A stretch of 62,969 nt of DNA, the filler included, from Octopus bimaculoides (Eukaryota): NCBI RefSeq assembly GCF_001194135.2. It is 5 parts of 4 records of this genome, joined end to end, with 100 filler letters (N's around TTAATTAATTAA, not from the genome) between each part and the next. Parts side by side here need not be neighbours in the genome. Positions count along the whole stretch, not along the records: positions 1 to 27,034 come from NC_069008.1; 4 more parts are not named here. One strand, 5' to 3'. Numbering within the stretch: position 1 is the stretch's first letter; each line of letters begins with the position of its first letter. The notes below the pieces were generated by a model. That model was given only the letters and a program-made list of their open reading frames with translations, had not been told where the DNA came from and made no database searches. Of this stretch, positions 4,407-25,544 are shown piece by piece. The position numbers and the translations under genes are program-made.

Positions 4407-4472
4407 TTGCTCTTGTTGAAAGAACTGATGACAGGTCACTGCTTATGGACTCACTGCTTCTTGGAAGACAAT
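4407..4472 (-). CDS. Probable downstream exon of the TIR gene (CLPRSSESISSDLSSVLSTRA)
   Basis: Acceptor ...aatctatttag|ATTGT and donor ...AGAGCAA|gtaagt. The exon is 66 nt, phase 1-1, open, and in frame with the TIR exon if spliced directly. It is unique sequence among repeats. Confidence 0.55.
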
Positions 4473-4830: not shown

Positions 4831-5249
4831 AATACATACATGCATACATACATTCAAGCACAAATACATAAATATACTTTAATATGTATGTGCATGTGTA
4901 TGTGTATATATACATACATAAACATATGTTTGTATGTACAGATATCTTTATGTGTGTGTATATGTATATATATATATATATATNNNNNNNNNNNNNNNNN
5001 NNNNNNNNNNNNNNNNNNNNNNNNNNNNNNNNNNNNNNNNNNNNNNNNNNNNNNNNNATAATTATAACCAAGGAGTATGGAGTGAACGAGTCCTTTTATT
5101 ACATTAATTTACAATTGTTTCATTGGAAACTGGTCTCATGAATATTGTTACATTCTGCAATAATATATGCAGCTACTGATTCATGAAGTGCCATTGATAA
5201 AAATTGAAATTCAATTCTTCAGAATTGTGCATAGAAGTTATTTGCTGTA

Positions 5250-6545
5250 GATACTTGAATTACTGATAATTTATACTGATAATGAGTTGGGCATGCTTAT
5301 ATGATTACAGTTACAAGCCTGCCAAAACAAAACAAACTGTGATTTGAATTGATGTTTTTTGAGGGATTTTGATTGTCTTTTGCTTTTGATTATTTTGTAT
5401 GGTTGTTGTTCCATTCTTTGGACTTGTCTCAGTAGTGGAAGGATCTGGTGGGTAATGTTGTAAACCTCTGTGTTTTGTGTTGTAATCAAGTGTAGAGTAT
5501 TGGGTGTATCTGAAGTATTTTTTGTCTTCCAAGTAGTATTTGTTTTAATTCCTGAAATACAGGATATTTTTCAGTTTTGGTGAAAATTGCATCTAACAGA
5601 GGAATTATTTGATAAGGAAAACAGGAACAAATTGAACAAAAAGCCTAAAAAATGTAGGAATAAAACATTAGATAAATTTTACGATTTCATATCTTCCTTC
5701 CCACACAAAGAACTACCACACTGTAAACTCAAACCCAATACCAGTCAAAAACAACAGGTAATCATGCATGAACTCAAAAACAATAACATTATAATTAAGG
5801 AAGCAGATAAGAAAGTGCAGTAATTATTATGGATGTTGAGCACTACAAAAGTACTATATTATCTCTACTAGAAGTCATGACCTATCATGACAAGGTCAAG
5901 ATTGTTGACAGAAAAATATCTATTTTTATTGTAAACAAAAAAAAAAATGTTACCATTACCATGAACAACAAGCACTGAGATAGTTTGAAGCTAATTGTTC
6001 TTGGGCTAGGTATGATAATAGTCACTGTATTAGGTTCCTTGATGTTAGGTGATCCTTGTGTGTTGTTGTCGCCATCCATCCATTGGTTTTTGTGTTGTTA
6101 CAGTGCTCTGGCTAGCTGCTGGTTCTACTTCTGTCTGCTGACTTCCTTCTTATGCATCCGGTTTGCTGTTTATTATCTGTCATCTGTTCATAGTGGTTAA
6201 AATACACTGAATATATAGTGGTGGATATGTTCAGAAAGAGTGCACAGAAGATGAAATTGTTGTTAGATCCGGTTCCACATGAAGTCTTGAAAGGCCAGAT
6301 TTGAATCATGATTGTGTTCTTGAGTTATTATTATTATTTTTTTTTTTTTTTGTCTTTTTACATTGAATATAGTGATCTGGGTTTGATTGCTAAATATTCC
6401 TGCTACAAGATAAACAATTACCAACAATCACAGACAATAACAAAAAAAGGTTTAACAAACAAACAATGTGACAACCTAATTAATTTTGAATGCAAAACTA
6501 GCTACTTCTACAACCTCCCCAAAATTCACAAACCCACATTTGTAC
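5250..6545. mobile_element. Scrambled Penelope-like RT fragments
   Basis: Plus-strand LKNNNIIIKEADK and YFYNLPKIHKP, which are PLE RT motifs. Some pieces appear inverted. Confidence 0.7.
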
Positions 6546-7051
6546 ATTGGGATAACATTCAGAATTGAGAAATGTGTTATGATGGAGATGAAGCACAGAA
6601 AAGTCATAAAACAGGCTGATTCATTAGTGCCATTGGACAAAATGCTTAGTAGCATGTCTTCTGGCTCATTACATTCTGGGTTTAAATGCTGCCAGGGTCA
6701 ACTTTGCCTTTCAACCATTTGTGCCTGAAATTAAATAGGATTTAACAGATTTACTTCATATGTATTTTATTGTTTCTATACCTCTTTGATACTATAAATA
6801 ACTAACATAGTATATAGCATTTACTCTTTACTTTTCATACTTTTACTCTAGGAGTGATCCTGATTTCTACTGTTCTCTCTTGATGCTATACAAGTTTCTC
6901 TAGGCCTATTTTAATCTATTTCATTATCAACTCTACATTCATTCAATATTAGCCTATTAACTAAATAATTTTATATCATACTTTCATTTCTTCCATAATT
7001 TTAGGTTTTTACTTTAATATCTTGAGCTGTCCCACCATTAAGTATTATATA

Positions 7052-7269
7052 TACAAGGGGATGCTGAAAACTTCCTGCTTTGGCTAAAAGAAAATACAGG
7101 AGGATCAGTTAATTATGATTTTATTCAACATATTCCCCTCTCAGATTCACACACTTATTGCAGTAATCCATCAGTTTTTCAAAGCCCTGTAAAAAATTTG
7201 GAAAGTTCAACCTTCAATGAGGCCTTTCACAATACCCTTCAAGCTAGGAACTTTTCAGCATCCCTTCGT
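7052..7269. mobile_element. Mariner-derived MITE
   Basis: Terminal inverted repeats tacaaggggatgctgaaaacttcctg and ctaggaacttttcagcatcccttcgt. Confidence 0.75.
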
Positions 7270-9214
7270 TTGTACAACATATCCAGACATGAGCACAAAT
7301 ACATCATATAAAAAGAAGTAGAGCCATCATTGAAGAGGTAGTGAATGGTGGGTGGGAGGAAAATGGGAGTAAAATGACAACTTACCTTATAGTCATCCTA
7401 ATAATACATGATTTGTAATCATTTGACACTAAATGACACTAGAATATTTAAATATTCATCAAGTAAAATGGTTACTGCCATAAAGCAGTAAAGAAAAAAA
7501 ACTATTTCATACCATATACAACAACTAAACAACACAAACTACTATCACCAGGTGAAAATACAATATGAAGAAAGATGGAGGCCTTTATATTCTCCAGTAT
7601 GCAAATTAGAACAATAGGGTAAATATAGGAGAATAGGGTAGAAGAAAAAGGTAAAGAGAGAAAGAGAGAGCATGAAAGAGGAGTGTGACGGTGTGGAGAA
7701 AAGCAAAGAACAAAGTAAGAGGGCCCTCTAGATTATGCCTCACACAAAGCAACAGAATGGGTGTGCATAGGTCAGCTAAAAATCCCTAGAAGGCTTAACA
7801 TAGGGCAGGGCAAGAGTGCATCACATCCTTTCTGTCAAGGATAATCACTCCTACTGAGGGACAAGACAGAGGTGCATTATTTGGTTTGGCCCACTCTTCT
7901 CTCATAATCTTAAAAACAATATCCCCAGGTTGTTTTCCCAAATACTAGATAGGGCTTTTTCTAGCCAGCATAGATACCATAGCATCTTCAAGCAGAATAC
8001 AATTATGTTATCCTTCTCCATTGCTGCATTACCATGATACCTAATAGGCACAAACTCAAATACTATGATGTGATTGCCACCAAGACTGGGGATGGAAATG
8101 CCATTGTTTACTCTGGAGCCCATACCACTCATAAGCTAGCATGCTGTGTAACCCATTCTAAGAGTACTCATGATGTAGATACTTCCACATAGTTTGGGGA
8201 TCTGCAGGATCATCTACCACTCTGGTTGAGATCAGAGTGGCTATTTAGGGTCATGTTAACCAAACAAATGTCCCACACTGTTCCACAATAGTTGGAAACC
8301 TCTGACCAGGGTTCTTCACCCACTAAATATAGGGTTCCTGACCAGCCACTGAATCCAGACTAATGTATGTATAAATGTAGGTTGTATAAATGTAGGTTCT
8401 ATAGCTACAGAGAGCCCAGGAAAGCATCACATTGCTGTGCACAAGCTAGAGTTAGGTTCTCCACTTCAATGGTTGAGTACACCAATACTATAGTACTAGG
8501 AAATGCTAATTATAGTCAGAGATGGTCAGTGTTGGGAAATATTTGGCCAAAGAAGGATTGGAAATTATCCTGGCCAGCAAAATCAATTTGCTTAATAATA
8601 GGTTTGTTTTGTGCTCACAGAAACTCACTTTCTGATTCTATCAAGTGGGCTTCAGCAACAATTATGATGGGATAAGCTAGTCTTTGACCCTTGCCCAGCA
8701 TGCTATGATGGGAATTTTCCCATTAGGCTGTTAAATTTCCTCATCTCATTTATCAAGCTACCCTTTGGTCTTTATCTGCCTCACAACTCCTGTCATCCTT
8801 TTCTACTGGTATGTATACGTTTGCTCTCCTTATCTCTAGTGTGTCTTTGGGGGATTTGATTCATCCAACCACTCTCTTCTTACCATTTTCACAGTCTTTG
8901 GGGTCTGGTGTATGCCGTTGTTGCTTTATCACATGTCTGAGTATTTATTTTCTTCTTTGTTGAACACTTCTTTTATGGTGATGTCATTGATAATTAGGTA
9001 GACCAATTCTTGTATAAAAGAGTCGATGGCATTGACTGCATGGTGGTAATGTTGATAAAGGACGAGGTTGATTTTGTTGAACCTTTCTCTTCTGTCATTT
9101 GATTTCTTCCTTTTCTCTTCTGGTGGCTTTGAAGTTTGTGGTTCCAATGGTGATGGAATACTGCCACTTGGTATGGTCTCAGGCTTGTGTTTCAAATGAT
9201 TTAGGTTCAATTCC

Positions 9215-9560
9215 AGTGGCTTTCAGTGTTGCTTTGAGTTGGTCCTTGTATTTTCAAGGAGGGAAAACCCATGGCCTTTTTCCTGAAGTGAACTCACTGA
9301 ATAAGACTTGATGAGGAACTTTGTCTCTTCCATTCTTCTTACATGTCCTGACAATTGAAGACAGTGTTTCATGATCATTAATTCAATACTTTGACTGTTG
9401 ACTCTTTCCAGGACTTTGTTATTGGTCACATAGTGTTCTCATTTGATGTTCAAGATTGAACGAAGGTTTTGCTGGTGAAAGTGTTCTAATTTTTAGATGT
9501 TGTGATGATATAGTGTCCAAGTTTTTCAGCCACATAGTAAGGTTGAAATGACCACAGCAT
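9215..9560 (-). mobile_element. RTE (BovB-like) LINE RT C-terminal fragment
   Basis: WTLYHHNI.KLEHFHQQNLRSILNIKWEHYVTNNKVLER...LQLSGHVRRMEE. Confidence 0.85.
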
Positions 9561-10323
9561 TATAAATCATAAATTTCTAATCCTGAATCTGCACATTGGT
9601 GTGAATGTGTGACAGTTGCCCTCCTAAGATCCAGTGACTACTTAGGAGTCTGGTCCTGCATGTGTGTTTGGACAAGCCTTTTAGGAGTACCGCTGCCCAC
9701 CTCAATCGAGGAAGGTCCTAGAAAAGGTGAACTAAACATTGAAAGTCATTACCACTGCTCGGCTGGGAAACCTCACCTGGCAGGCCACCCATCATGTGGT
9801 CAAAACAACAAGAAACTTAAGACAACCAATACCATCTTTGGAACATAGAATGTGAGAATTCTTGTTGACATTGACAGCACTGACAAACCAGAAAGATGCA
9901 CAGCTCTAATCTCAAAAGAACTGGTTGGTGTCAATGTGGACATCACAGCCCTGAGTGAAACACAGCTTTCAGGGGAAGGATAACTCAAAGCAACTGGTTC
10001 TGACTACACACTCTTTTGGAAAGGCAAGGATGAAGGAAAGAGAAGAATCCAAGGAGTCAGTTTTGCTATTAAAACCTGCATCATACAAGACCATCATTTG
10101 ACACCAATTGCCATCAATGAATGACTAATGACTCTTCCGTTACCACTTCCAAATTACATCACTCTCTTTTCTGCTTATGCTCCAACTCTTGATGCTAATG
10201 AAGAAGCAAAGAATCAATTTTACCAACAACTAAGTAACACCATTGTCAACATACCACCAAAGGACAAACTCTTGTTACTAGGAGATTTCAATGCAAGGGT
10301 AGGAAAGGATCATCGCCTATGGA

Positions 10324-11660
10324 ACTAGAAAAGCACTCCGAGAGCACAGACCTCCACCAAGCAGCTCATTTCCACCCATATACACGTATACTGAAAATTG
10401 CCCAATTTCTCAAACCAACGCCGGCAAAACATAACCTCCTCCCATACTTATCTCGACCATCATCATCATCAACATTGTCTCTGCTTTCACCACAATCACC
10501 GTCAAAACTACAATCACCACAATCAGTTTCTTTACACGGTTGAAAATCCATTATCCGATACTCATGGGACCGAGATGTTTGCAGATTTTTGATTTTTCTA
10601 ATTTCAGAATGCTTTATTAAAAAAAGAAATAAAATTGCATCTACAAAACGGAACAGTTTGAGGGTAGAAACCAGGTCTAAACACAATAGCTTATAGATAT
10701 ACTCTGAATGTAGTTCTATATAAATCTTTAATATTTTTTTTTTATACTAAACACCTTGAGAAATGTTAAGATATCAACCCCTACCCACGTTGTCATGCTT
10801 TGATTAAAAGGTTACAGCATAGATTAAGATTACTTAGATAAGTTTCGGCCGAAGTTGACTTAGGCCATGTCTAATTTAATAGCACCGCCTGGAAGAGATA
10901 CACAGTCAGCTCTGGGGAACCGTAGCCCATTCAAGCAGAAGGTTATTGTTTTCAGAGACATATCTGGGTGTGGGTGGTTTAGCTGGTATTTGTTGGGGGT
11001 AATCGTATAGGGATTGTTTGAATGCCGTGAAGTCACTTTCCTCCTTTATGTATGTCTGGCACGATGTTGAAGAGAGCAGGGCCAATTGAGGTGAAATAGT
11101 TTTGTCATAGTGTTGGCCCAGGGGCCAAGCCCCAGACGAATTTTAAAGATGGGCAATGTTGCTGAAATATTTTCCACATCATACAGATGATATAGAGCTC
11201 ACAGTGGTGGTGGAGGGAGCAAAGCTTGAGCTTTTTGAGTCGATCCCAATAGTCAAGGCTTGTCATGTCATCCTCCACAGACCTCCGTGAAGCAGCTCAT
11301 TTTAAGATAGATACGCGAGTATAATTACTAATAGAGAAATGAAAATAAACTTTGGAAACAGCAACGCCACCACAGGTTATGTGAAAACTATGAACATGTT
11401 TTCAAGGGAGATAATCAAAGAATGTAACATTGAAATACTTTATGTAAAGTAAATATAACAAATGAAAAACCCTTCAAGAATCCATAAAAATTCATGGATC
11501 ACTACCAAAATTTCATCATCTGTTCCTTGTGTCATTACCAACTTCTCCTGTAAATTTCATCAAATACTGTTCACAACATTTTGAGTTATTTTGCACACAG
11601 ACGGGCAGACGGACAAACCAACGCCAATGAAAACATAACCTCCTTCCTTGGTGAAGGTAA
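10324..11660. mobile_element. Composite insertion bounded by subterminal-IR element copies (Helentron/HINE-like, tentative)
   Basis: Starts actagaaaagcactccgagagcacagacctccaccaag and ends aaacataacctccttccttggtgaaggtaa. Subterminal IRs are at 10350-10361 and 11647-11658. There are two partial copies (10324-10440 and 11276-11660). Confidence 0.55.
10860..11270 (-). mobile_element. CR1-like LINE 3' fragment
   Basis: LKLCSLHHHCELYIICMMWKYF (CpG-decayed LKLYSLQRRRERY) and FTSIGPALFNIVP. Confidence 0.7.
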
Positions 11661-18601: not shown

Positions 18602-19035
18602 TCAAACCTGAAAAAGATGAAAGACAAAATTAACCTCAGTGGTGTTTGAACTGAGAATGTAAAGTATCAGAAGAAATACCATTCAGCATTTTGTCCTACA
18701 AGCTAATGATTCTGTCAGCTCATCACCTTAACAACAACAATAATAATAAAGTCAAGTGAAATGTTGCTAAGCAGTTTGCCTGGCCTGCTAATGGTTCTGC
18801 CAGCTCACCACTTAAACAATTATAACAATAATTTTTTCTTCTATAGACACAAAACCCGAAATTTTGGAGAAGGTGGGTACATCAATTACATTGACTCCAG
18901 TACTCAACTGGTTTTATTTTATTGCCCCAAAAATGTTGAAAGGTAAAGTGGGATCTGAACTCAAATGGTAAAGAGCTGGAATTACTGCAAGGTATTTTCT
19001 TCAATGGCCTAATGATCATGCCTATCTCTCACCTT
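18602..19035 (-). mobile_element. SINE family A copies
   Basis: Head and core matches to family A. Confidence 0.7.
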
Positions 19036-19183
19036 TAATAACAATGATGTGTGAGGATGATGTTGGTAATGTTGACGATGATGATGAGGGGGTAGAGGAG
19101 GAGGAAGAAGAGGAGAAAGAGGAAGGGGAGTGGGAAGAGAAGAAGAAGAAGAAGAAGAAGAAGAAGATTGTTTAGAAACTTAC

Positions 19184-20323
19184 TGCTACGTAACAGTCGT
19201 GTCAATGTTGAGTAAAACTGCTTCTGACGTACATCGAGATATCCAACAGTTTGAAGTGGTTCTGGCACATCACAGTCCTCCAGCATTATTACAATCAAAC
19301 GCTGCTGGTAGAGGCTGGATTCTGTAAGGTTCTGCAAGATCTCCTGGAAGTCAAACCATGTCGACAGGACATAGCTTCGGCTGAGCGCAATCACAACACG
19401 CTCACTGAGCATGGCAGCCCATAGTGTTGACTGGATTGTGCCATTGCTGGTCCTTGTTTTGGAGGTGGTCTTGCCCTTGTTCTTGCTGCCTGTATGGATG
19501 CACTGCTTTACGTTGAGACCATCTTCACTCTCATCAGCACCATCATCGTCGTCGTCATCACTACCATCACCAACACTGCAGTTGCTACTGTTGATGGTGT
19601 TGTTAGGATTGCTTTTGTTGTTGTTGTTATTGATGCTGTTGTTGATGATGATGCTTCTGGTACTGCTGCTTCTGCTGCTGCAGTTGCTGTTATTATTCTT
19701 GTTCTTGATGCTATTGCCGTGGCTAGGACTGCTCTGGCTGATAAGAATGCTAGGAATGCTGGGATTGCTGTAATTGTTATGGCTATGAATGCTGGGATTT
19801 CTATGACCACTTGGAATGCTGGGATTGCCATAGTCGTTGTTGAGAATGCTACATTTGCCATGACTTCTAGGAATGATGGGACTACTCATATTACTAGGAA
19901 TGCTGGGATCGCCAAGGCCACTAGAAATTCTGGGATTTTCTTGATTGCTTTGGGTAGCCTCAGTGGGGCTTGGTTTGGTGTAGTAACATTTATAGTTGTA
20001 TGGACATTCCTCCAGCTTCTTCACAATGCTCTCGATCCATGCAATATCATTGGGGCTGTGTGAAAAGAAAATATGGTAGCGGTATAGGTCCTGCAAGGGA
20101 GGGGCTGGAAAGAAGGAGTCCATGTTGAAGCAGGCATCAGCAGATGTTGTTGCACCACTTTCCATCTTGCTGCCATCACCATCATCATCATCATTATTAT
20201 TGAGCGAGATGGAACAGTCAATGGGACTGTATGTAGTTGTTGGTTCAACTGGAATCTGAGGTGTGTCCTCCTCGTTGCTGGCTGTGTCACTCTGTCCATC
20301 TTCAGGGATCAAGTTCTGGTGAT
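19184..20323 (-). CDS. Internal coding exon of a TIR-domain protein (TIR split by a ~180-aa low-complexity insertion)
   Basis: The minus-strand acceptor is ...ctttcctccacag|ATCAC and the donor is ...CGTAGCA|gtaagt. The exon is 1140 nt, phase 1-1 and fully open. Translation gives TIR-like elements: YHIFFSHS-NDIAWIESIVKKLE-PYNYKCYY, then after the insertion ERVVIALSRSYVLSTW, RLIVIMLEDCDVPEPL and YLD. Confidence 0.85.
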
Positions 20324-20689
20324 CTGTGGAGGAAAGAAAGAAAATAATGAAGAGGGACAAGAAGGCAAAATGAAAAAGAAGAGGAGAAGAAGAGGAACAA
20401 CAGCAACAAAATAACAATAATGATAGTGATAATGATAAGTCATGGCTAAGGCTATGCTGGAGCAGTGCTTTCTGTGATGATGAAGATGATAATGATATTA
20501 GTCATGATGATGATTGTGGTAGTGTCATTAATGATTGATGATAGTGGCAGTGGTGATGGTCATTATTGTAATATTGGGGTTTGTGGAGGCAGGGGTATAG
20601 TAGTCATGGTGGTCATAATGGTGCTGACAATGCTTATGATGGTCACAATGGTTATTGTGATAGCTGTGCTGATACAGTATTAAGGATGT

Positions 20690-21065: not shown

Positions 21066-21127
21066 AATATATNNNNNNNNNNNNNNNNNNNNNNNNNNNN
21101 NNNNNNNNNNNNNNNNNNNNNNNNNNN

Positions 21128-22101: not shown

Positions 22102-23364
22102 TACAAGGTGTCTTGAAATTAAGGCAACCAAAGTTTTGGACTTTAATCACTATCAATAAATGTGATAAGATATGAAAATTATCCATCATTATAAAAGGTT
22201 AGTGTCTTCTTTTTGTTTAAGATTAAATAAATTCAAACTTATAAATTAGATAATGGCTTTAGACTGAAATACAATCATAACCCTCCACAAAGAAGGCAAA
22301 AGTAATTCTGCTATAGCAATAAAGTTTAAAATTAACCAAGCAATAGTCTGGAAAATTATCAAGAAATTTCAAGAGACTGGTTCTACTGCTGATCAACCTA
22401 GACATGGCCAAGGAGGAAGTGTACAGACCCCTCAGCTTATCAAAAGTACCAGAGAAAAGATATGGTGAAATCCTTGTTGTTCTGTTAGTAAACTGGCTGC
22501 CATAGCAAAAATAAGCTGAACATCAATGCATCGAATGCTGAAGGAGGAACTCAGGAACCACCCCTACAAGATGGTTTGTTGTCATGAGCTCATGCAAGTT
22601 TATTAGGCCATGAGACTGGAGAAAAGTCGTCTTATCCTGTGTCAGATTGCTGAAGGCACACTACCCAACCTGGTGTTCACTGATGAAAAGACATTTGACA
22701 TCGAACAAACAGTAAATCACCAGAATGACCAATTTTGGAGTGTATCTGGCTCTGTCTAGAGTAGACTCGTAAATCAACATCAAAATCCACAGTCAGTTAT
22801 GGTTTGGGTGACTGTGACTGGAAGATCTCCCCTTTTTTTGTGCCTTTGGATGTTAACATTGACACACAATGATACATTACATTAGTGACATTCTGGAAGC
22901 TGACCTGCATCCAAGGGTGAATAAGTACTTTCAAGACACACATTGGAGCCTCCAACAAGATTCTGCACCATCCCACAGCATGAAACAGACACAACACTGG
23001 ATTCAGGAAAACATTCCATCATTCATAGGCAAGGATGTATGGCCCTCAAGAAGCCCCAATTTTAACTCATTGGATTTTTCTGTTTGGTCCATTTTGGAGA
23101 CTCTTCATGCTTCACTCAATGCTCTGAAGGCAAAACTGTACCAGGAATGGGCTTTGATTCTGCAAGGACAGCTGTTTGCTGTGTGTGAAGCATTCACACC
23201 TAGACATAAGGCTGTTAATCAAAACAGATGATCATATCAAATAAATGTGGTAGTGTCATAATTGTGTTTCCTTTAGCATTGCAATGCTTGGACCCAAAAT
23301 ATAACAATATTTTGTTTTGGCAAATTGAAAAATGACAATTGCTTTAATTTTGAGACACCCTGTA
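22102..23364 (+). mobile_element. Tc1/mariner-superfamily maT (DD37D) transposon, decayed
   Basis: TIRs tacaaggtgtcttgaaattaaggcaa and ttgctttaattttgagacaccctgta. Motifs VFTDEK and QQDSAPSH...WPSRSPNFNSLD, with 37 residues between the last two Asp. Confidence 0.9.
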
Positions 23365-25471: not shown

Positions 25472-25544
25472 NNNNNNNNNNNNNNNNNNNNNNNNNNNNN
25501 NNNNNNNNNNNNNNNNNNNNNNNNNNNNNNNNNNNNNNATATAT

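What the first reader, a model, noticed from the sequence alone, without database searches (positions are those of the whole stretch)
19440..19979. TIR domain whose BB-loop is replaced by a ~180-aa disordered, repeat-bearing insertion
Seen: the exon encodes the TIR N-terminal half (YHIFFSHS...YKCYY, 19980-20081) and C-terminal half (TIQSTLWAAMLSERVVIALS...YLD, 19188-19439). Between them are 180 codons of S/N/P/D-rich sequence with no stop and the frame kept. Known: in canonical TIR domains this position holds the short BB-loop (DRDxxPG-like), a main TIR-TIR interaction surface, and no such motif is visible here. Inference: this is a TIR adaptor or regulator with an intrinsically disordered loop, which could change partner choice, act as a decoy, or promote condensate-type assembly. 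It is the most novel-looking host feature in the window.
Basis: partly seen in the sequence, partly recalled or inferred. Interest (0 to 1): 0.75.

Follow-up and report, generated by a model that had tools for sequence, protein, structure and literature searches.

The report
Octopus TIR domain with giant loop
In octopuses, one surface loop of an immune-type signalling domain (TIR), in a little-studied membrane protein, has grown from about 17 to 187-756 floppy, repeat-rich residues while the domain around it stays conserved; the loop is real and probably translated, but what it does is untested.

Summary
Window 20323..19184 (minus strand) is one coding exon of an Octopus bimaculoides gene (RefSeq XP_052833621-3, 100% identical). 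It encodes a TIR domain whose βB-αB (BB) loop holds 180 extra in-frame codons (19979..19440).

- Pfam TIR_2 matches in two pieces. With the insert removed it matches end to end.
- AlphaFold2 gives a confident TIR core (pLDDT about 90) and an unstructured insert (about 30).
- About 45 relatives have only 17-20 residues here. These are bivalves, gastropods, decapodiform cephalopods and further relatives, unnamed or from a nemertean; O. sinensis and O. vulgaris have 196, Argonauta hians 756.
- The frame is open in all four octopods, far beyond chance. The insert has no good splice sites, and every annotated isoform keeps it.
- The insert holds a 27-39-nt repeat array (core AATCCCAGCAT, peptide NPSIPS) and triplet runs. 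It is the fastest-evolving part of the protein.

The interpretation needs correcting. No close relative has the canonical RDxxPG motif, so nothing was "replaced". The protein is also not a soluble adaptor: it is an N-terminal TIR fused to a two-pass TMEM268-like (DUF4481) membrane protein found across Lophotrochozoa.

My best reading is a tolerated, slippage-driven disordered loop, possibly carrying short docking motifs. Decoy or condensate roles are untested.

The parts
19184..20323 (-). Single coding exon (1140 nt, phase 1 at both ends). It encodes the pre-TIR region, the whole TIR domain and the loop insert.
   Evidence: The acceptor AG is at 20325-20324 and the donor GT at 19183-19182. It is 100% identical to XP_052833622.1 (P0008). 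The same single-exon layout is seen in a decapodiform genome (L001) and in Argonauta (L003).
19980..20105 (-). TIR N-terminal half: APPLQDLYRYHIFFSHS (βA), αA, and YKCYY (βB).
   Evidence: It matches the first part of Pfam TIR_2. In the AF2 model, E17-21, H24-38 and E45-49 have pLDDT about 90. The family's invariant residues are kept.
19440..19979 (-). Insert of 180 codons in the BB loop (βB-αB). It is low-complexity and predicted to be disordered. Net gain over relatives is about 167-170 residues.
   Evidence: 0 stops where 7.4 are expected. pLDDT is about 30. The spacer is 187 aa against 17-20 aa in about 45 relatives. No donor site matches the consensus at 5 or more of 7 positions.
19753..19937 (-). 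Array of six 27-57-nt units with core AAT CCC AGC ATT CCT AG. The peptides are NPRISS, DPSIPS, SPIIPR, NPSIPS, NPSIHS and NPSIPS.
   Evidence: The same core, with the same codons, occurs 9-12 times in the Argonauta insert.
19725..19766 (-). Block NPSIPSILISQSSP, the only stretch of the insert clearly alignable with Argonauta (NPRIPSIRISESSP). It contains PSILIS, which resembles PxIxIT and pLxIS motifs; that reading is speculative.
   Evidence: BLASTP finds 11/14 identical, E = 0.007. 8 of 11 identical residues use the same codon, against 29 of 78 in the TIR halves.
19500..19724 (-). N/S-rich and acidic low-complexity part: NKNNNSNCSSRSSS...NNNNNK...DDDDDD. It is built of triplet and 9-24-nt tandem repeats.
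   Evidence: TRF rows at 19588-19689. Repeat family D1.
19185..19439 (-). TIR C-terminal half: αB (IQSTLWAAMLSE), βC (VVIALS), αC, βD, βE and αE.
   Evidence: TIR_2 profile positions 50-120. In the AF2 model H225-239, E242-247, H249-267, E276-280 and H303-312 have pLDDT about 90. It is 96.5% identical to O. sinensis.
4407..4472 (-). Next coding exon of the same gene, (N)CLPRSSESISSDLSSVLSTRA(N), about 14.7 kb downstream.
   Evidence: tblastn with P0004. Splice sites ttAG|AT...GCAA|GTAAGT.

Best explanation
This is a genuine, almost certainly translated, octopod-specific expansion of the BB loop (βB-αB) of a TIR domain.

The gene is the Octopus bimaculoides orthologue of a lophotrochozoan family. 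Family members have an N-terminal TIR domain followed by two transmembrane helices and a TMEM268-like (DUF4481) region.

The ancestral loop was short (17-20 residues), already lacked the canonical RDxxPG motif, and in coleoid cephalopods contained a run of Asn codons. In the octopod lineage it grew in two ways: replication slippage or unequal exchange of triplet runs, and spread of a 27-39-nt unit (core AATCCCAGCAT, peptide N-P-S-I-P-S). It reached 187 residues in O. bimaculoides, 196 in O. sinensis and O. vulgaris, and 756 in Argonauta hians.

Shown here:
- The TIR core around the loop stays under purifying selection and folds normally.
- The insert is a flexible, fast-evolving surface tether.

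Inferred:
- The loop is mostly a tolerated, nearly neutral expansion.
- Because it sits on the surface that scaffold-type TIRs (MyD88, MAL) use for head-to-tail stacking, it probably loosens or gates TIR-TIR assembly.
- Its conserved N-P-x-I-P-S units and its PSI[L/R]IS block may serve as short docking or phosphorylation motifs.
For: Identity and context:
- The exon is 100% identical to XP_052833622.1, and every isoform in three Octopus species keeps the insert.

TIR assignment:
- Pfam TIR_2 scores 36.1 bits on the native ORF and 42.6 bits on the joined halves, covering 1-121 of 122 profile positions.
- The AF2 core has pLDDT about 90 and the insert about 30, lying between βB and αB.
- Foldseek's top hits are TIR domains: Hydra TRR-2, TRAM, MyD88, TLR10. 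For the orthologue without the insert, TM-scores normalised to the target are 0.64-0.71 to MyD88, MAL and TLR10.

Lineage specificity:
- The spacer is 17-20 aa in about 45 relatives and 187, 196 and 756 aa in octopods.
- A decapodiform genome has the same single exon with NNNNNRMSKNKNSM at this site.

Coding status:
- There are 0 stops in the coding frame. Shuffles give a mean of 7.4, and 0.06% are stop-free. In Argonauta the mean is 23 and 0 of 1000 shuffles are stop-free; the other five frames there have 5-68 stops.
- O. bimaculoides and O. sinensis differ by 4 in-frame indels.
- The insert has no consensus-like donor site.

Constraint on the core:
- 42 of 43 family-invariant residues are kept in Octopus and 41 of 43 in Argonauta.
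- Against O. sinensis, the TIR halves are 96-97% identical and the insert 87%.

Growth by repeats:
-.

Homology of the insert across octopods:
- Both ends and one internal block align between Octopus and Argonauta.

General tendency to expand:
- The pre-TIR region is 62 aa in decapodiforms, 73-75 in Octopus and 305 in Argonauta.
- Argonauta also carries C-terminal low-complexity inserts.

Family architecture:
- DUF4481 is found in orthologues, and DUF4481 is the TMEM268 domain.
Against: - No transcript or peptide evidence was seen directly. No RNA-seq-derived contig covering the insert turned up in the collections searched.
- The antisense frame is also stop-free in Octopus, so composition explains part of the frame's openness.
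- dN/dS could not be computed, because O. sinensis and O. vulgaris DNA was not retrievable. "Nearly neutral" versus "selected" therefore stays open.
- The core AAT CCC AGC AT keeps its synonymous positions across Octopus and Argonauta. The conserved block keeps 8 of 11 codons against 29 of 78 in the TIR halves. This hints at constraint beyond a neutral loop.
- All functional statements (steric gating, docking motifs) are inference.
Confidence: 0.8

Rival explanations
1. The loop is a selected functional module, not just tolerated. It would be a multivalent array of short linear motifs (N-P-x-I-P-S; PSI[L/R]IS, resembling a calcineurin PxIxIT dock or an IRF-recruiting pLxIS site). That array would give the TIR-TMEM268 protein a new signalling output in octopods, or a regulated lid over its assembly surface.
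For: - The motif core is repeated 6 times in Octopus and 9-12 times in Argonauta with the same codons.
- The block NPSIPSILISQSSP / NPRIPSIRISESSP is conserved, E = 0.007.
- The insert has been kept in frame since the Octopus-Argonauta split.
- It is 87% identical between two Octopus species.
Against: - Identical codons in the copies point to amplification at the DNA level rather than selection on the peptide.
- Length (187 vs 756 residues) and composition differ greatly between genera.
- The insert is the fastest-evolving part of the protein.
- By my own rough estimate, a 4-residue [LI]xIS-type match in 180 S/I-rich residues is expected by chance about 0.4 times.
- Other loops and tails of the same protein also expanded in Argonauta.
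- No binding data exist.
Confidence: 0.2
2. The insert, or most of it, is removed from the mature mRNA as an unannotated intron or exitron. The protein would then have a normal short loop.
For: - Its length is a multiple of 3, and low-complexity exonic stretches are typical exitrons.
- An older O. bimaculoides model (P0004) started only at MLSERVV.
- I have no direct transcript evidence.
Against: - No GT in the insert matches the donor consensus at 5 or more of 7 positions, and there is only one weak acceptor.
- All eight or more annotated isoforms in three species keep it.
- The frame is stop-free over 180, 189 and 756 codons in four species, far beyond the shuffled expectation. Selection would not maintain this in an intron.
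- Indels between species are in frame.
Confidence: 0.06
3. The TIR domain is decaying: a pseudogenised or functionless domain disrupted by a repeat expansion.
For: - The insert splits the domain at a functionally important surface.
- The Argonauta TIR is more diverged from Octopus (61-69% identity) than the decapodiform TIR is (75-77%).
Against: - 42 of 43 and 41 of 43 family-invariant residues are kept.
- The TIR halves are 96-97% identical between Octopus species.
- The core has a confident AF2 fold.
- The rest of the protein is 99% conserved.
- The reading frame is intact in four species.
Confidence: 0.03

Closest known systems
Scaffold-type animal TIR domains (MyD88, MAL/TIRAP, TRAM, TLR1/2/6/10, Hydra TRR-2; PDB 7beq, 8w8m, 5uzb, 9dki, 2j67, 4w8g/h)
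   Same: Same fold and order of secondary-structure elements. They are the best sequence matches (4w8g, E = 1.8e-5) and the best structure matches. The insert lies in the loop that these TIRs use for head-to-tail assembly; that role of the loop is established knowledge, not tested here.
   Different: - There is no RDxxPG or conserved Pro-Gly in the loop.
- The loop is 187-756 residues long instead of about 10-15.
- The domain is at the N-terminus of a two-pass membrane protein, with no LRR, Ig or death domain.
TMEM268 (C9orf91; Pfam DUF4481)
   Same: Orthologues of this gene carry two transmembrane helices and a DUF4481 match: 79 bits in Capitella P0082, and 26-32 bits in oysters and others. 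Human TMEM268 is described as two TM domains plus DUF4481 (PMC6748091).
   Different: - In human TMEM268, DUF4481 is reported to span residues 38-328 of 342, which leaves no room for a TIR domain.
- The octopus protein itself does not reach the Pfam threshold for DUF4481.
- That part of the gene lies outside the window.
ecTIR-DC families (evolutionarily conserved TIR-domain-containing proteins of invertebrates; class cited in PMC6321704)
   Same: An invertebrate TIR protein, conserved across phyla, with no TIR-bearing vertebrate counterpart known to me (not tested here) and no known function.
   Different: The defining paper is not in the library, so I cannot say which numbered family this is, if any. 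I found no description of a long BB-loop insert.
Low-complexity (Asn/Ser/Gln-rich) inserts inside conserved domains, as in Plasmodium and Dictyostelium proteins (from my own knowledge)
   Same: Triplet-repeat-driven, fast-evolving, disordered inserts placed in surface loops with the fold preserved. RefSeq even named the octopus proteins after Dictyostelium-type proteins.
   Different: - This one is in a cephalopod and sits at a specific, functionally central TIR loop.
- It includes a longer (27-39 nt) unit with a conserved core shared by two octopod superfamilies.

Membership tests
TIR domain (Pfam PF13676 TIR_2 / PF01582 TIR) | Profile match above the curated threshold | tested here: met
   TIR_2 scores 36.1 bits on the native ORF and 42.6 bits on the joined halves, against a cut-off of 28. 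PF01582 stays below its cut-off (13.5 and 16.8 against 21.3) in octopus but passes in orthologues.
TIR domain (Pfam PF13676 TIR_2 / PF01582 TIR) | Flavodoxin-like fold with order βA-αA-βB-(BB loop)-αB-βC-αC-βD-αD-βE-αE | tested here: met
   The AF2 model has these elements in that order with pLDDT about 90. Foldseek's top hits are all TIR domains.
TIR domain (Pfam PF13676 TIR_2 / PF01582 TIR) | Box 2 / BB-loop motif (RDxxPG with a conserved Pro) | tested here: not met
   The motif is absent in octopus and in all close orthologues, whose loops read, for example, NDSVIQTKQN. Only a more distant subfamily has RDFD. This motif is typical of TIR domains but is not required for the fold.
TIR domain (Pfam PF13676 TIR_2 / PF01582 TIR) | Catalytic Glu of NADase-type TIRs (SARM1, plant and bacterial) | tested here: inconclusive
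   A Glu is present in αC (WFDFQEIL) and is mostly conserved in the family, though it is Q in P0005 and P0006. Its register relative to the catalytic Glu was not established. Structural neighbours are scaffold TIRs; SARM1 ranks only 50th.
TMEM268 / DUF4481 (PF14800) | Profile match above threshold, plus two adjacent transmembrane helices | tested here: inconclusive
   Met in orthologues: P0082 79 bits, P0065 31.7, P0016 27.1, P0014 26.5, against a cut-off of 25. The model has helices at 326-348 and 358-406. The octopus protein P0008 gives no DUF4481 hit at E <= 0.1; the link rests on full-length orthology.
Classical TIR adaptors (MyD88, TIRAP, TRIF, TRAM, SARM1) | Their partner domains or motifs (death domain; PIP2-binding motif; SAM/ARM; myristoylation site) and a soluble or peripheral-membrane nature | tested here: not met
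   Pfam finds only TIR in octopus, and TIR plus DUF4481 in orthologues. The protein has two predicted transmembrane helices.
TLR / IL-1R-type receptors | Extracellular LRR or Ig domains, then one TM helix, then a C-terminal TIR | tested here: not met
   The TIR is N-terminal to the TM helices, and there are no LRR or Ig matches.
ecTIR-DC families | Assignment to one of the numbered architectures | not testable with these tools
   The defining paper is not held in the library. The class is only mentioned in PMC6321704.

The most novel reading that the evidence does not exclude
The octopod BB-loop expansion is an evolved regulatory module. It would be a disordered, multivalent array of N-P-x-I-P-S units plus a conserved PSI[L/R]IS site (pLxIS-like or PxIxIT-like). 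This array would recruit a kinase, phosphatase or transcription-factor partner, or would gate TIR oligomerisation. In that case an ancient TIR-TMEM268 membrane protein would have been rewired into an octopod-specific signalling hub.
Probability: 0.15. Interest if true: 0.65.

Novelty: new variant of a known kind. Interest (0 to 1): 0.4.

Why it matters
The BB loop is the best-studied interaction surface of TIR domains. This is a natural case in which that loop carries 170 to 740 extra disordered residues while the fold and the family's invariant residues are kept. It offers three things:
- a ready-made test of how much the loop matters for assembly in a non-canonical TIR;
- an example of how triplet and minisatellite slippage builds disordered regions inside folded domains in cephalopods;
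- a reason to look at the uncharacterised TIR-TMEM268 (DUF4481) family, whose vertebrate relative TMEM268 has been linked to integrin signalling and anti-infectious responses (PMC6748091, PMC11169502).

It also flags annotation problems. The RefSeq names ("pats1 kinase", "H3K79 methyltransferase") are low-complexity artefacts, and the Argonauta model lacks the first half of its TIR domain.

Tried and rejected
- Interspecific dN/dS. DNA of the O. sinensis and O. vulgaris orthologues could not be fetched: the gene ranges are 131-138 kb, too long, or only the longest product is indexed. Only protein-level identity per region was obtained.
- Transcript evidence from public assemblies. No RNA-seq-derived contig with the octopus insert appeared. 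The decapodiform transcripts found (P0010 cluster, 102 contigs) have the short loop.
- An intron inside the insert. A splice-site scan found no plausible donor, so I rejected this as unlikely.
- Origin from a transposon or dispersed repeat. The core motif occurs only inside the insert in the window and in the 36-kb Argonauta locus, and not in the 20-kb decapodiform locus. There are no Rfam hits in the window. No support found.
- A known domain within the insert. Pfam at E <= 10 finds only TIR models on the ORF.
- Exon 1 (MQDIWVSS...). It is not in the window.
- Literature. Nothing was found on TIR plus DUF4481, on long BB-loop inserts, or on this octopus gene.
- A structural match for the DUF4481 part. 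None in the PDB; all significant hits were to the TIR domain.
- The antisense ORF 19494..20063 (+). It is stop-free only as the mirror of the coding frame, so I do not treat it as a gene.
Full report
**What is in the sequence**

The finding lies in a 460-codon ORF on the minus strand, 19035..20417. Reading the DNA and comparing it with the annotated protein shows a single coding exon, 20323..19184 (1140 nt). Its acceptor is ...tcctccacAG|AT and its donor is AGCA|GTAAGT.

19979..19440 is 180 codons (TKPSP...TSNG). These lie between RYHIFFSHS...YKCYY (20081..19980) and TIQSTLWAAMLSERVVIALS... (19439 downward).

Pfam TIR_2 hits the native ORF in two stretches (36.1 bits; cut-off 28). On the two halves joined it scores 42.6 bits and covers profile positions 1-121 of 122.

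The insert has no stop in the coding frame, and 2 and 26 in the other two sense frames. Dinucleotide-preserving shuffles give a mean of 7.4 stops, and only 0.06% of 5000 shuffles are stop-free. The mirror frame on the plus strand is also open, as expected for the antisense of a stop-free frame, and is not evidence of a second gene.

The insert is 71% S, N, P, D, G, T and K. It is built from triplet and 9-24-nt tandem repeats plus six copies of a longer unit. The core of that unit, AATCCCAGCATTCC, occurs 6 times here (7 matches in the whole window) where about 0.23 are expected by chance.

**Whose gene it is**

A protein search with the exon plus the downstream sequence returned XP_052833622.1 of Octopus bimaculoides. 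It is 711 aa, 100% identical and covers 100% of the query. Also returned were orthologues from O. sinensis (90% identity), Argonauta hians, a cuttlefish-like decapodiform, bivalves and gastropods.

The RefSeq names are clearly artefacts of the low-complexity stretch: "probable serine/threonine-protein kinase pats1" and "histone-lysine N-methyltransferase, H3 lysine-79 specific".

The next exon of the gene is at 4472..4407 on the minus strand. Exon 1 is not in the window.

Full-length family members have four parts:
- an N-terminal disordered region;
- the TIR domain;
- a conserved linker and β-rich segment;
- two transmembrane helices and a helical C-terminal domain.

Pfam DUF4481 is found in several orthologues: Capitella P0082 at 79 bits, P0065 at 31.7, and oysters at 26.5-27.1, against a cut-off of 25. 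The octopus protein itself gives no such hit. DUF4481 is the domain of human TMEM268, described as a protein with two TM domains (PMC6748091).

An exhaustive profile search found 169 cluster representatives at E <= 1e-10. The named ones include gastropods, the annelid Capitella teleta and the nemertean Lineus longissimus. All are labelled "uncharacterized". So the gene is not a soluble adaptor. It is a member of a lophotrochozoan TIR-TMEM268-like membrane protein family.

**Where the insert sits in the fold**

I ran AlphaFold2 on the window-encoded TIR region (313 aa, 17-sequence alignment). The results were as follows:
- βA is 17-21, αA 24-38 and βB 45-49, with pLDDT of 86-93 over most of this stretch.
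- Residues 54-227 have pLDDT about 30 and no secondary structure.
- αB is 225-239, βC 242-247, αC 249-267, βD 276-280 and αE 303-312, with pLDDT of 74-92.

The insert is therefore exactly the βB-αB (BB) loop.

Foldseek's best PDB matches are TIR domains: Hydra TRR-2, TRAM, MyD88, TLR10 and TLR1. The decapodiform orthologue has no insert. Its model matches whole TIR domains of TLR10, MyD88 and MAL over about 136 columns, with target-normalised TM-scores of 0.64-0.71. NADase-type TIRs rank far lower: RUN1 is 32nd and SARM1 50th. A family profile against PDB sequences agrees, with 4w8g at E = 1.8e-5. Even the short decapodiform loop is modelled with low confidence (residues 138-156), so this loop is probably flexible across the family.

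**How unusual the loop length is, and how old**

I measured the distance from the βB motif (YxYKCYY) to AAMLSERV in every retrieved relative:

| Group | Spacer length (aa) |
|---|---|
| Bivalves, gastropods and the further relatives that match both motifs | 17-18 |
| Decapodiform cephalopods | 20 |
| O. bimaculoides | 187 |
| O. sinensis, O. vulgaris | 196 |
| Argonauta hians | 756 |

None of the close relatives has an RDxxPG-type motif. Their loops read NDSVIQTKQN, TDYRIQSKLG or NNNNNRTSKNKSSN. Only a more distant subfamily, which includes the nemertean, keeps an RDFD-like sequence.

A decapodiform genome (L001) has the same single exon with the same acceptor. Its loop begins with the codons AAT AAC AAT AAC AAC, a short Asn run that is a plausible seed for slippage.

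In the Argonauta genome (L003) the published model starts only at MLSERVV. The genomic ORF 6305..10336 nevertheless contains the missing first half of the TIR domain and a 2268-nt spacer in frame. That spacer has 0 stops, against a shuffled mean of 23, and 0 of 1000 shuffles are stop-free. The other five frames have 5-68 stops.

Three parts of the insert align between Octopus and Argonauta:
- the start, T(K/R)P(S/A)P;
- the end, ...SSKNASMQS compared with ...TSNGTIQS;
- one internal block, NPSIPSILISQSSP compared with NPRIPSIRISESSP (11 of 14 identical, E = 0.007).

The expansion therefore predates the split of Octopodoidea and Argonautoidea, is absent from Decapodiformes, and has since changed greatly in length.

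**Is it coding, and is the TIR still under constraint?**

All annotated isoforms keep the insert: X1-X3 in O. bimaculoides, X1-X2 in O. sinensis and three in O. vulgaris. Within the insert, no GT matches the donor consensus at 5 or more of 7 positions, and there is only one weak acceptor.

Identity between O. bimaculoides and O. sinensis varies by region:

| Region | Identity |
|---|---|
| Insert | 87.2%, plus four in-frame indels totalling 9 residues |
| TIR halves | 96.5-97.2% |
| N-terminal region | 95.4% |
| Rest of the protein | 99.1% |

Of 43 residues invariant in the non-octopod family alignment, Octopus keeps 42 and Argonauta 41. The domain is therefore not decaying.

I could not obtain direct transcript evidence or nucleotide sequences of the other Octopus species. 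"Translated" thus rests on frame conservation in four species and on the gene models. dN/dS remains to be done.

**How the insert grew, and what it may do**

The six NPSIPS-type units in Octopus use nearly identical codons (AAT CCC AGC ATT CCT AG). The 9-12 units in Argonauta (NPSMHC, NPSMLC, NPSIPS, NPRIPS and others) share the same AAT CCC AGC/AGA AT core, including its synonymous positions. In Argonauta four identical 39-nt units stand in tandem. This is the signature of minisatellite-type amplification at the DNA level. The rest of the insert is triplet-repeat-like.

Argonauta also expanded the pre-TIR region, which is 305 aa there against 62 in decapodiforms and 73-75 in Octopus. It carries low-complexity inserts in the C-terminal domain too. 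The protein therefore accumulates such sequence wherever it is tolerated, and the composition differs between genera. This favours a largely tolerated, slippage-driven expansion over a composition-dependent function such as a prion-like one.

Against pure neutrality, the conserved block keeps 8 of 11 codons, compared with 29 of 78 in the TIR halves, and the unit core has persisted in both lineages. The block contains PSILIS in Octopus and PSIRIS in Argonauta. This fits the calcineurin PxIxIT pattern and resembles the pLxIS motif of TRIF, MAVS and STING. Both readings come from my own knowledge of those motifs, are easily matched by chance in an S/I-rich sequence, and are offered only as hypotheses.

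In MyD88 and MAL filaments the BB loop inserts into the neighbouring subunit (established knowledge; the PDB entries listed are such filaments). A long tether at this position would therefore probably hinder or gate such stacking. That too is inference.

**Comparison with what is known, and novelty**

- The fold is an ordinary scaffold-type TIR.
- The architecture (TIR plus TMEM268-like) belongs to an uncharacterised invertebrate family, probably among the "ecTIR-DC" proteins. I could not read the paper that defines those.
- Low-complexity inserts in domain loops are a known phenomenon.
- I found no description of a TIR domain with a BB loop of hundreds of residues, of TIR plus DUF4481, or of this octopus gene.

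I rate it a new variant of a known kind. It is solid as an observation and moderate in interest, and it would matter more if the loop proves to carry functional motifs.

**Verdict**

- Best explanation: a translated, octopod-specific, slippage-built disordered expansion of the BB loop in a conserved TIR-TMEM268-like membrane protein. Confidence is 0.8 for the anatomy and history; the functional consequences are inferred only.

Noticed in passing
window 19184-20323 (the gene as a whole): The RefSeq product names for this gene are misleading artefacts of the low-complexity insert: "probable serine/threonine-protein kinase pats1" in O. bimaculoides, and "histone-lysine N-methyltransferase, H3 lysine-79 specific" in O. 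sinensis, O. vulgaris and O. bimaculoides isoform X3. Pfam finds only a TIR domain.
   Followed up: yes
L003 6305-10336 (+), Argonauta hians BAAFZT010000055.1: The deposited Argonauta protein (GAB1607139.1) starts at MLSERVV and so lacks half of its TIR domain. The genomic ORF upstream holds the missing half, a 756-aa in-frame loop and a 305-aa pre-TIR low-complexity region. The Argonauta TIR is also more diverged from Octopus (61-69% identity) than the decapodiform TIR is (75-77%).
   Followed up: partly
window 19753-19937 (-); L003 8414-9305 (+): The repeat core AAT CCC AGC/AGA AT(T/G) keeps its synonymous positions across all copies and across Octopus and Argonauta. Whether this reflects recent amplification in each lineage or a constraint at the nucleotide or RNA level is unexplained.
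   Followed up: partly
proteins P0040, P0056, P0058, P0069 (nemertean and unnamed relatives): A more distant branch of the same family keeps an RDFD(K/E)N sequence at the BB loop, close to the canonical RDxxPG. The mollusc branch apparently lost the motif before the octopod expansion.
   Followed up: no
proteins P0008 vs P0019 (downstream exons, outside the window): Isoform X2 skips a 48-residue segment (IALGMLNRCVHVNQ...DISECVL) just after the second transmembrane helix. The same alternative form exists in O. sinensis and in Magallana gigas (P0015), so the exon skipping appears to be conserved.
   Followed up: no
window 22869-23231 (+): This ORF has a sequence (QQDSAPSH...WPSRSPNFNSLDFSVW) that looks like the C-terminal part of a Tc1/mariner DDE transposase, in the upstream intron. 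Pfam DDE_3 gives only E = 0.16.
   Followed up: partly
window 4984-5057, 21073-21127, 25472-25538: Runs of N (assembly gaps) lie inside the introns flanking the TIR exon. Long (CA)n/(TG)n-type microsatellite tracts lie at about 15.7-16.3 kb and 26.6-27.0 kb.
   Followed up: no
family-wide (P0082 Capitella, P0040 Lineus, molluscs): A TIR domain fused to a TMEM268-like (DUF4481) two-pass membrane region is conserved across Lophotrochozoa, and every named record listed is labelled "uncharacterized" or "hypothetical". I found no paper that mentions this architecture.
   Followed up: partly
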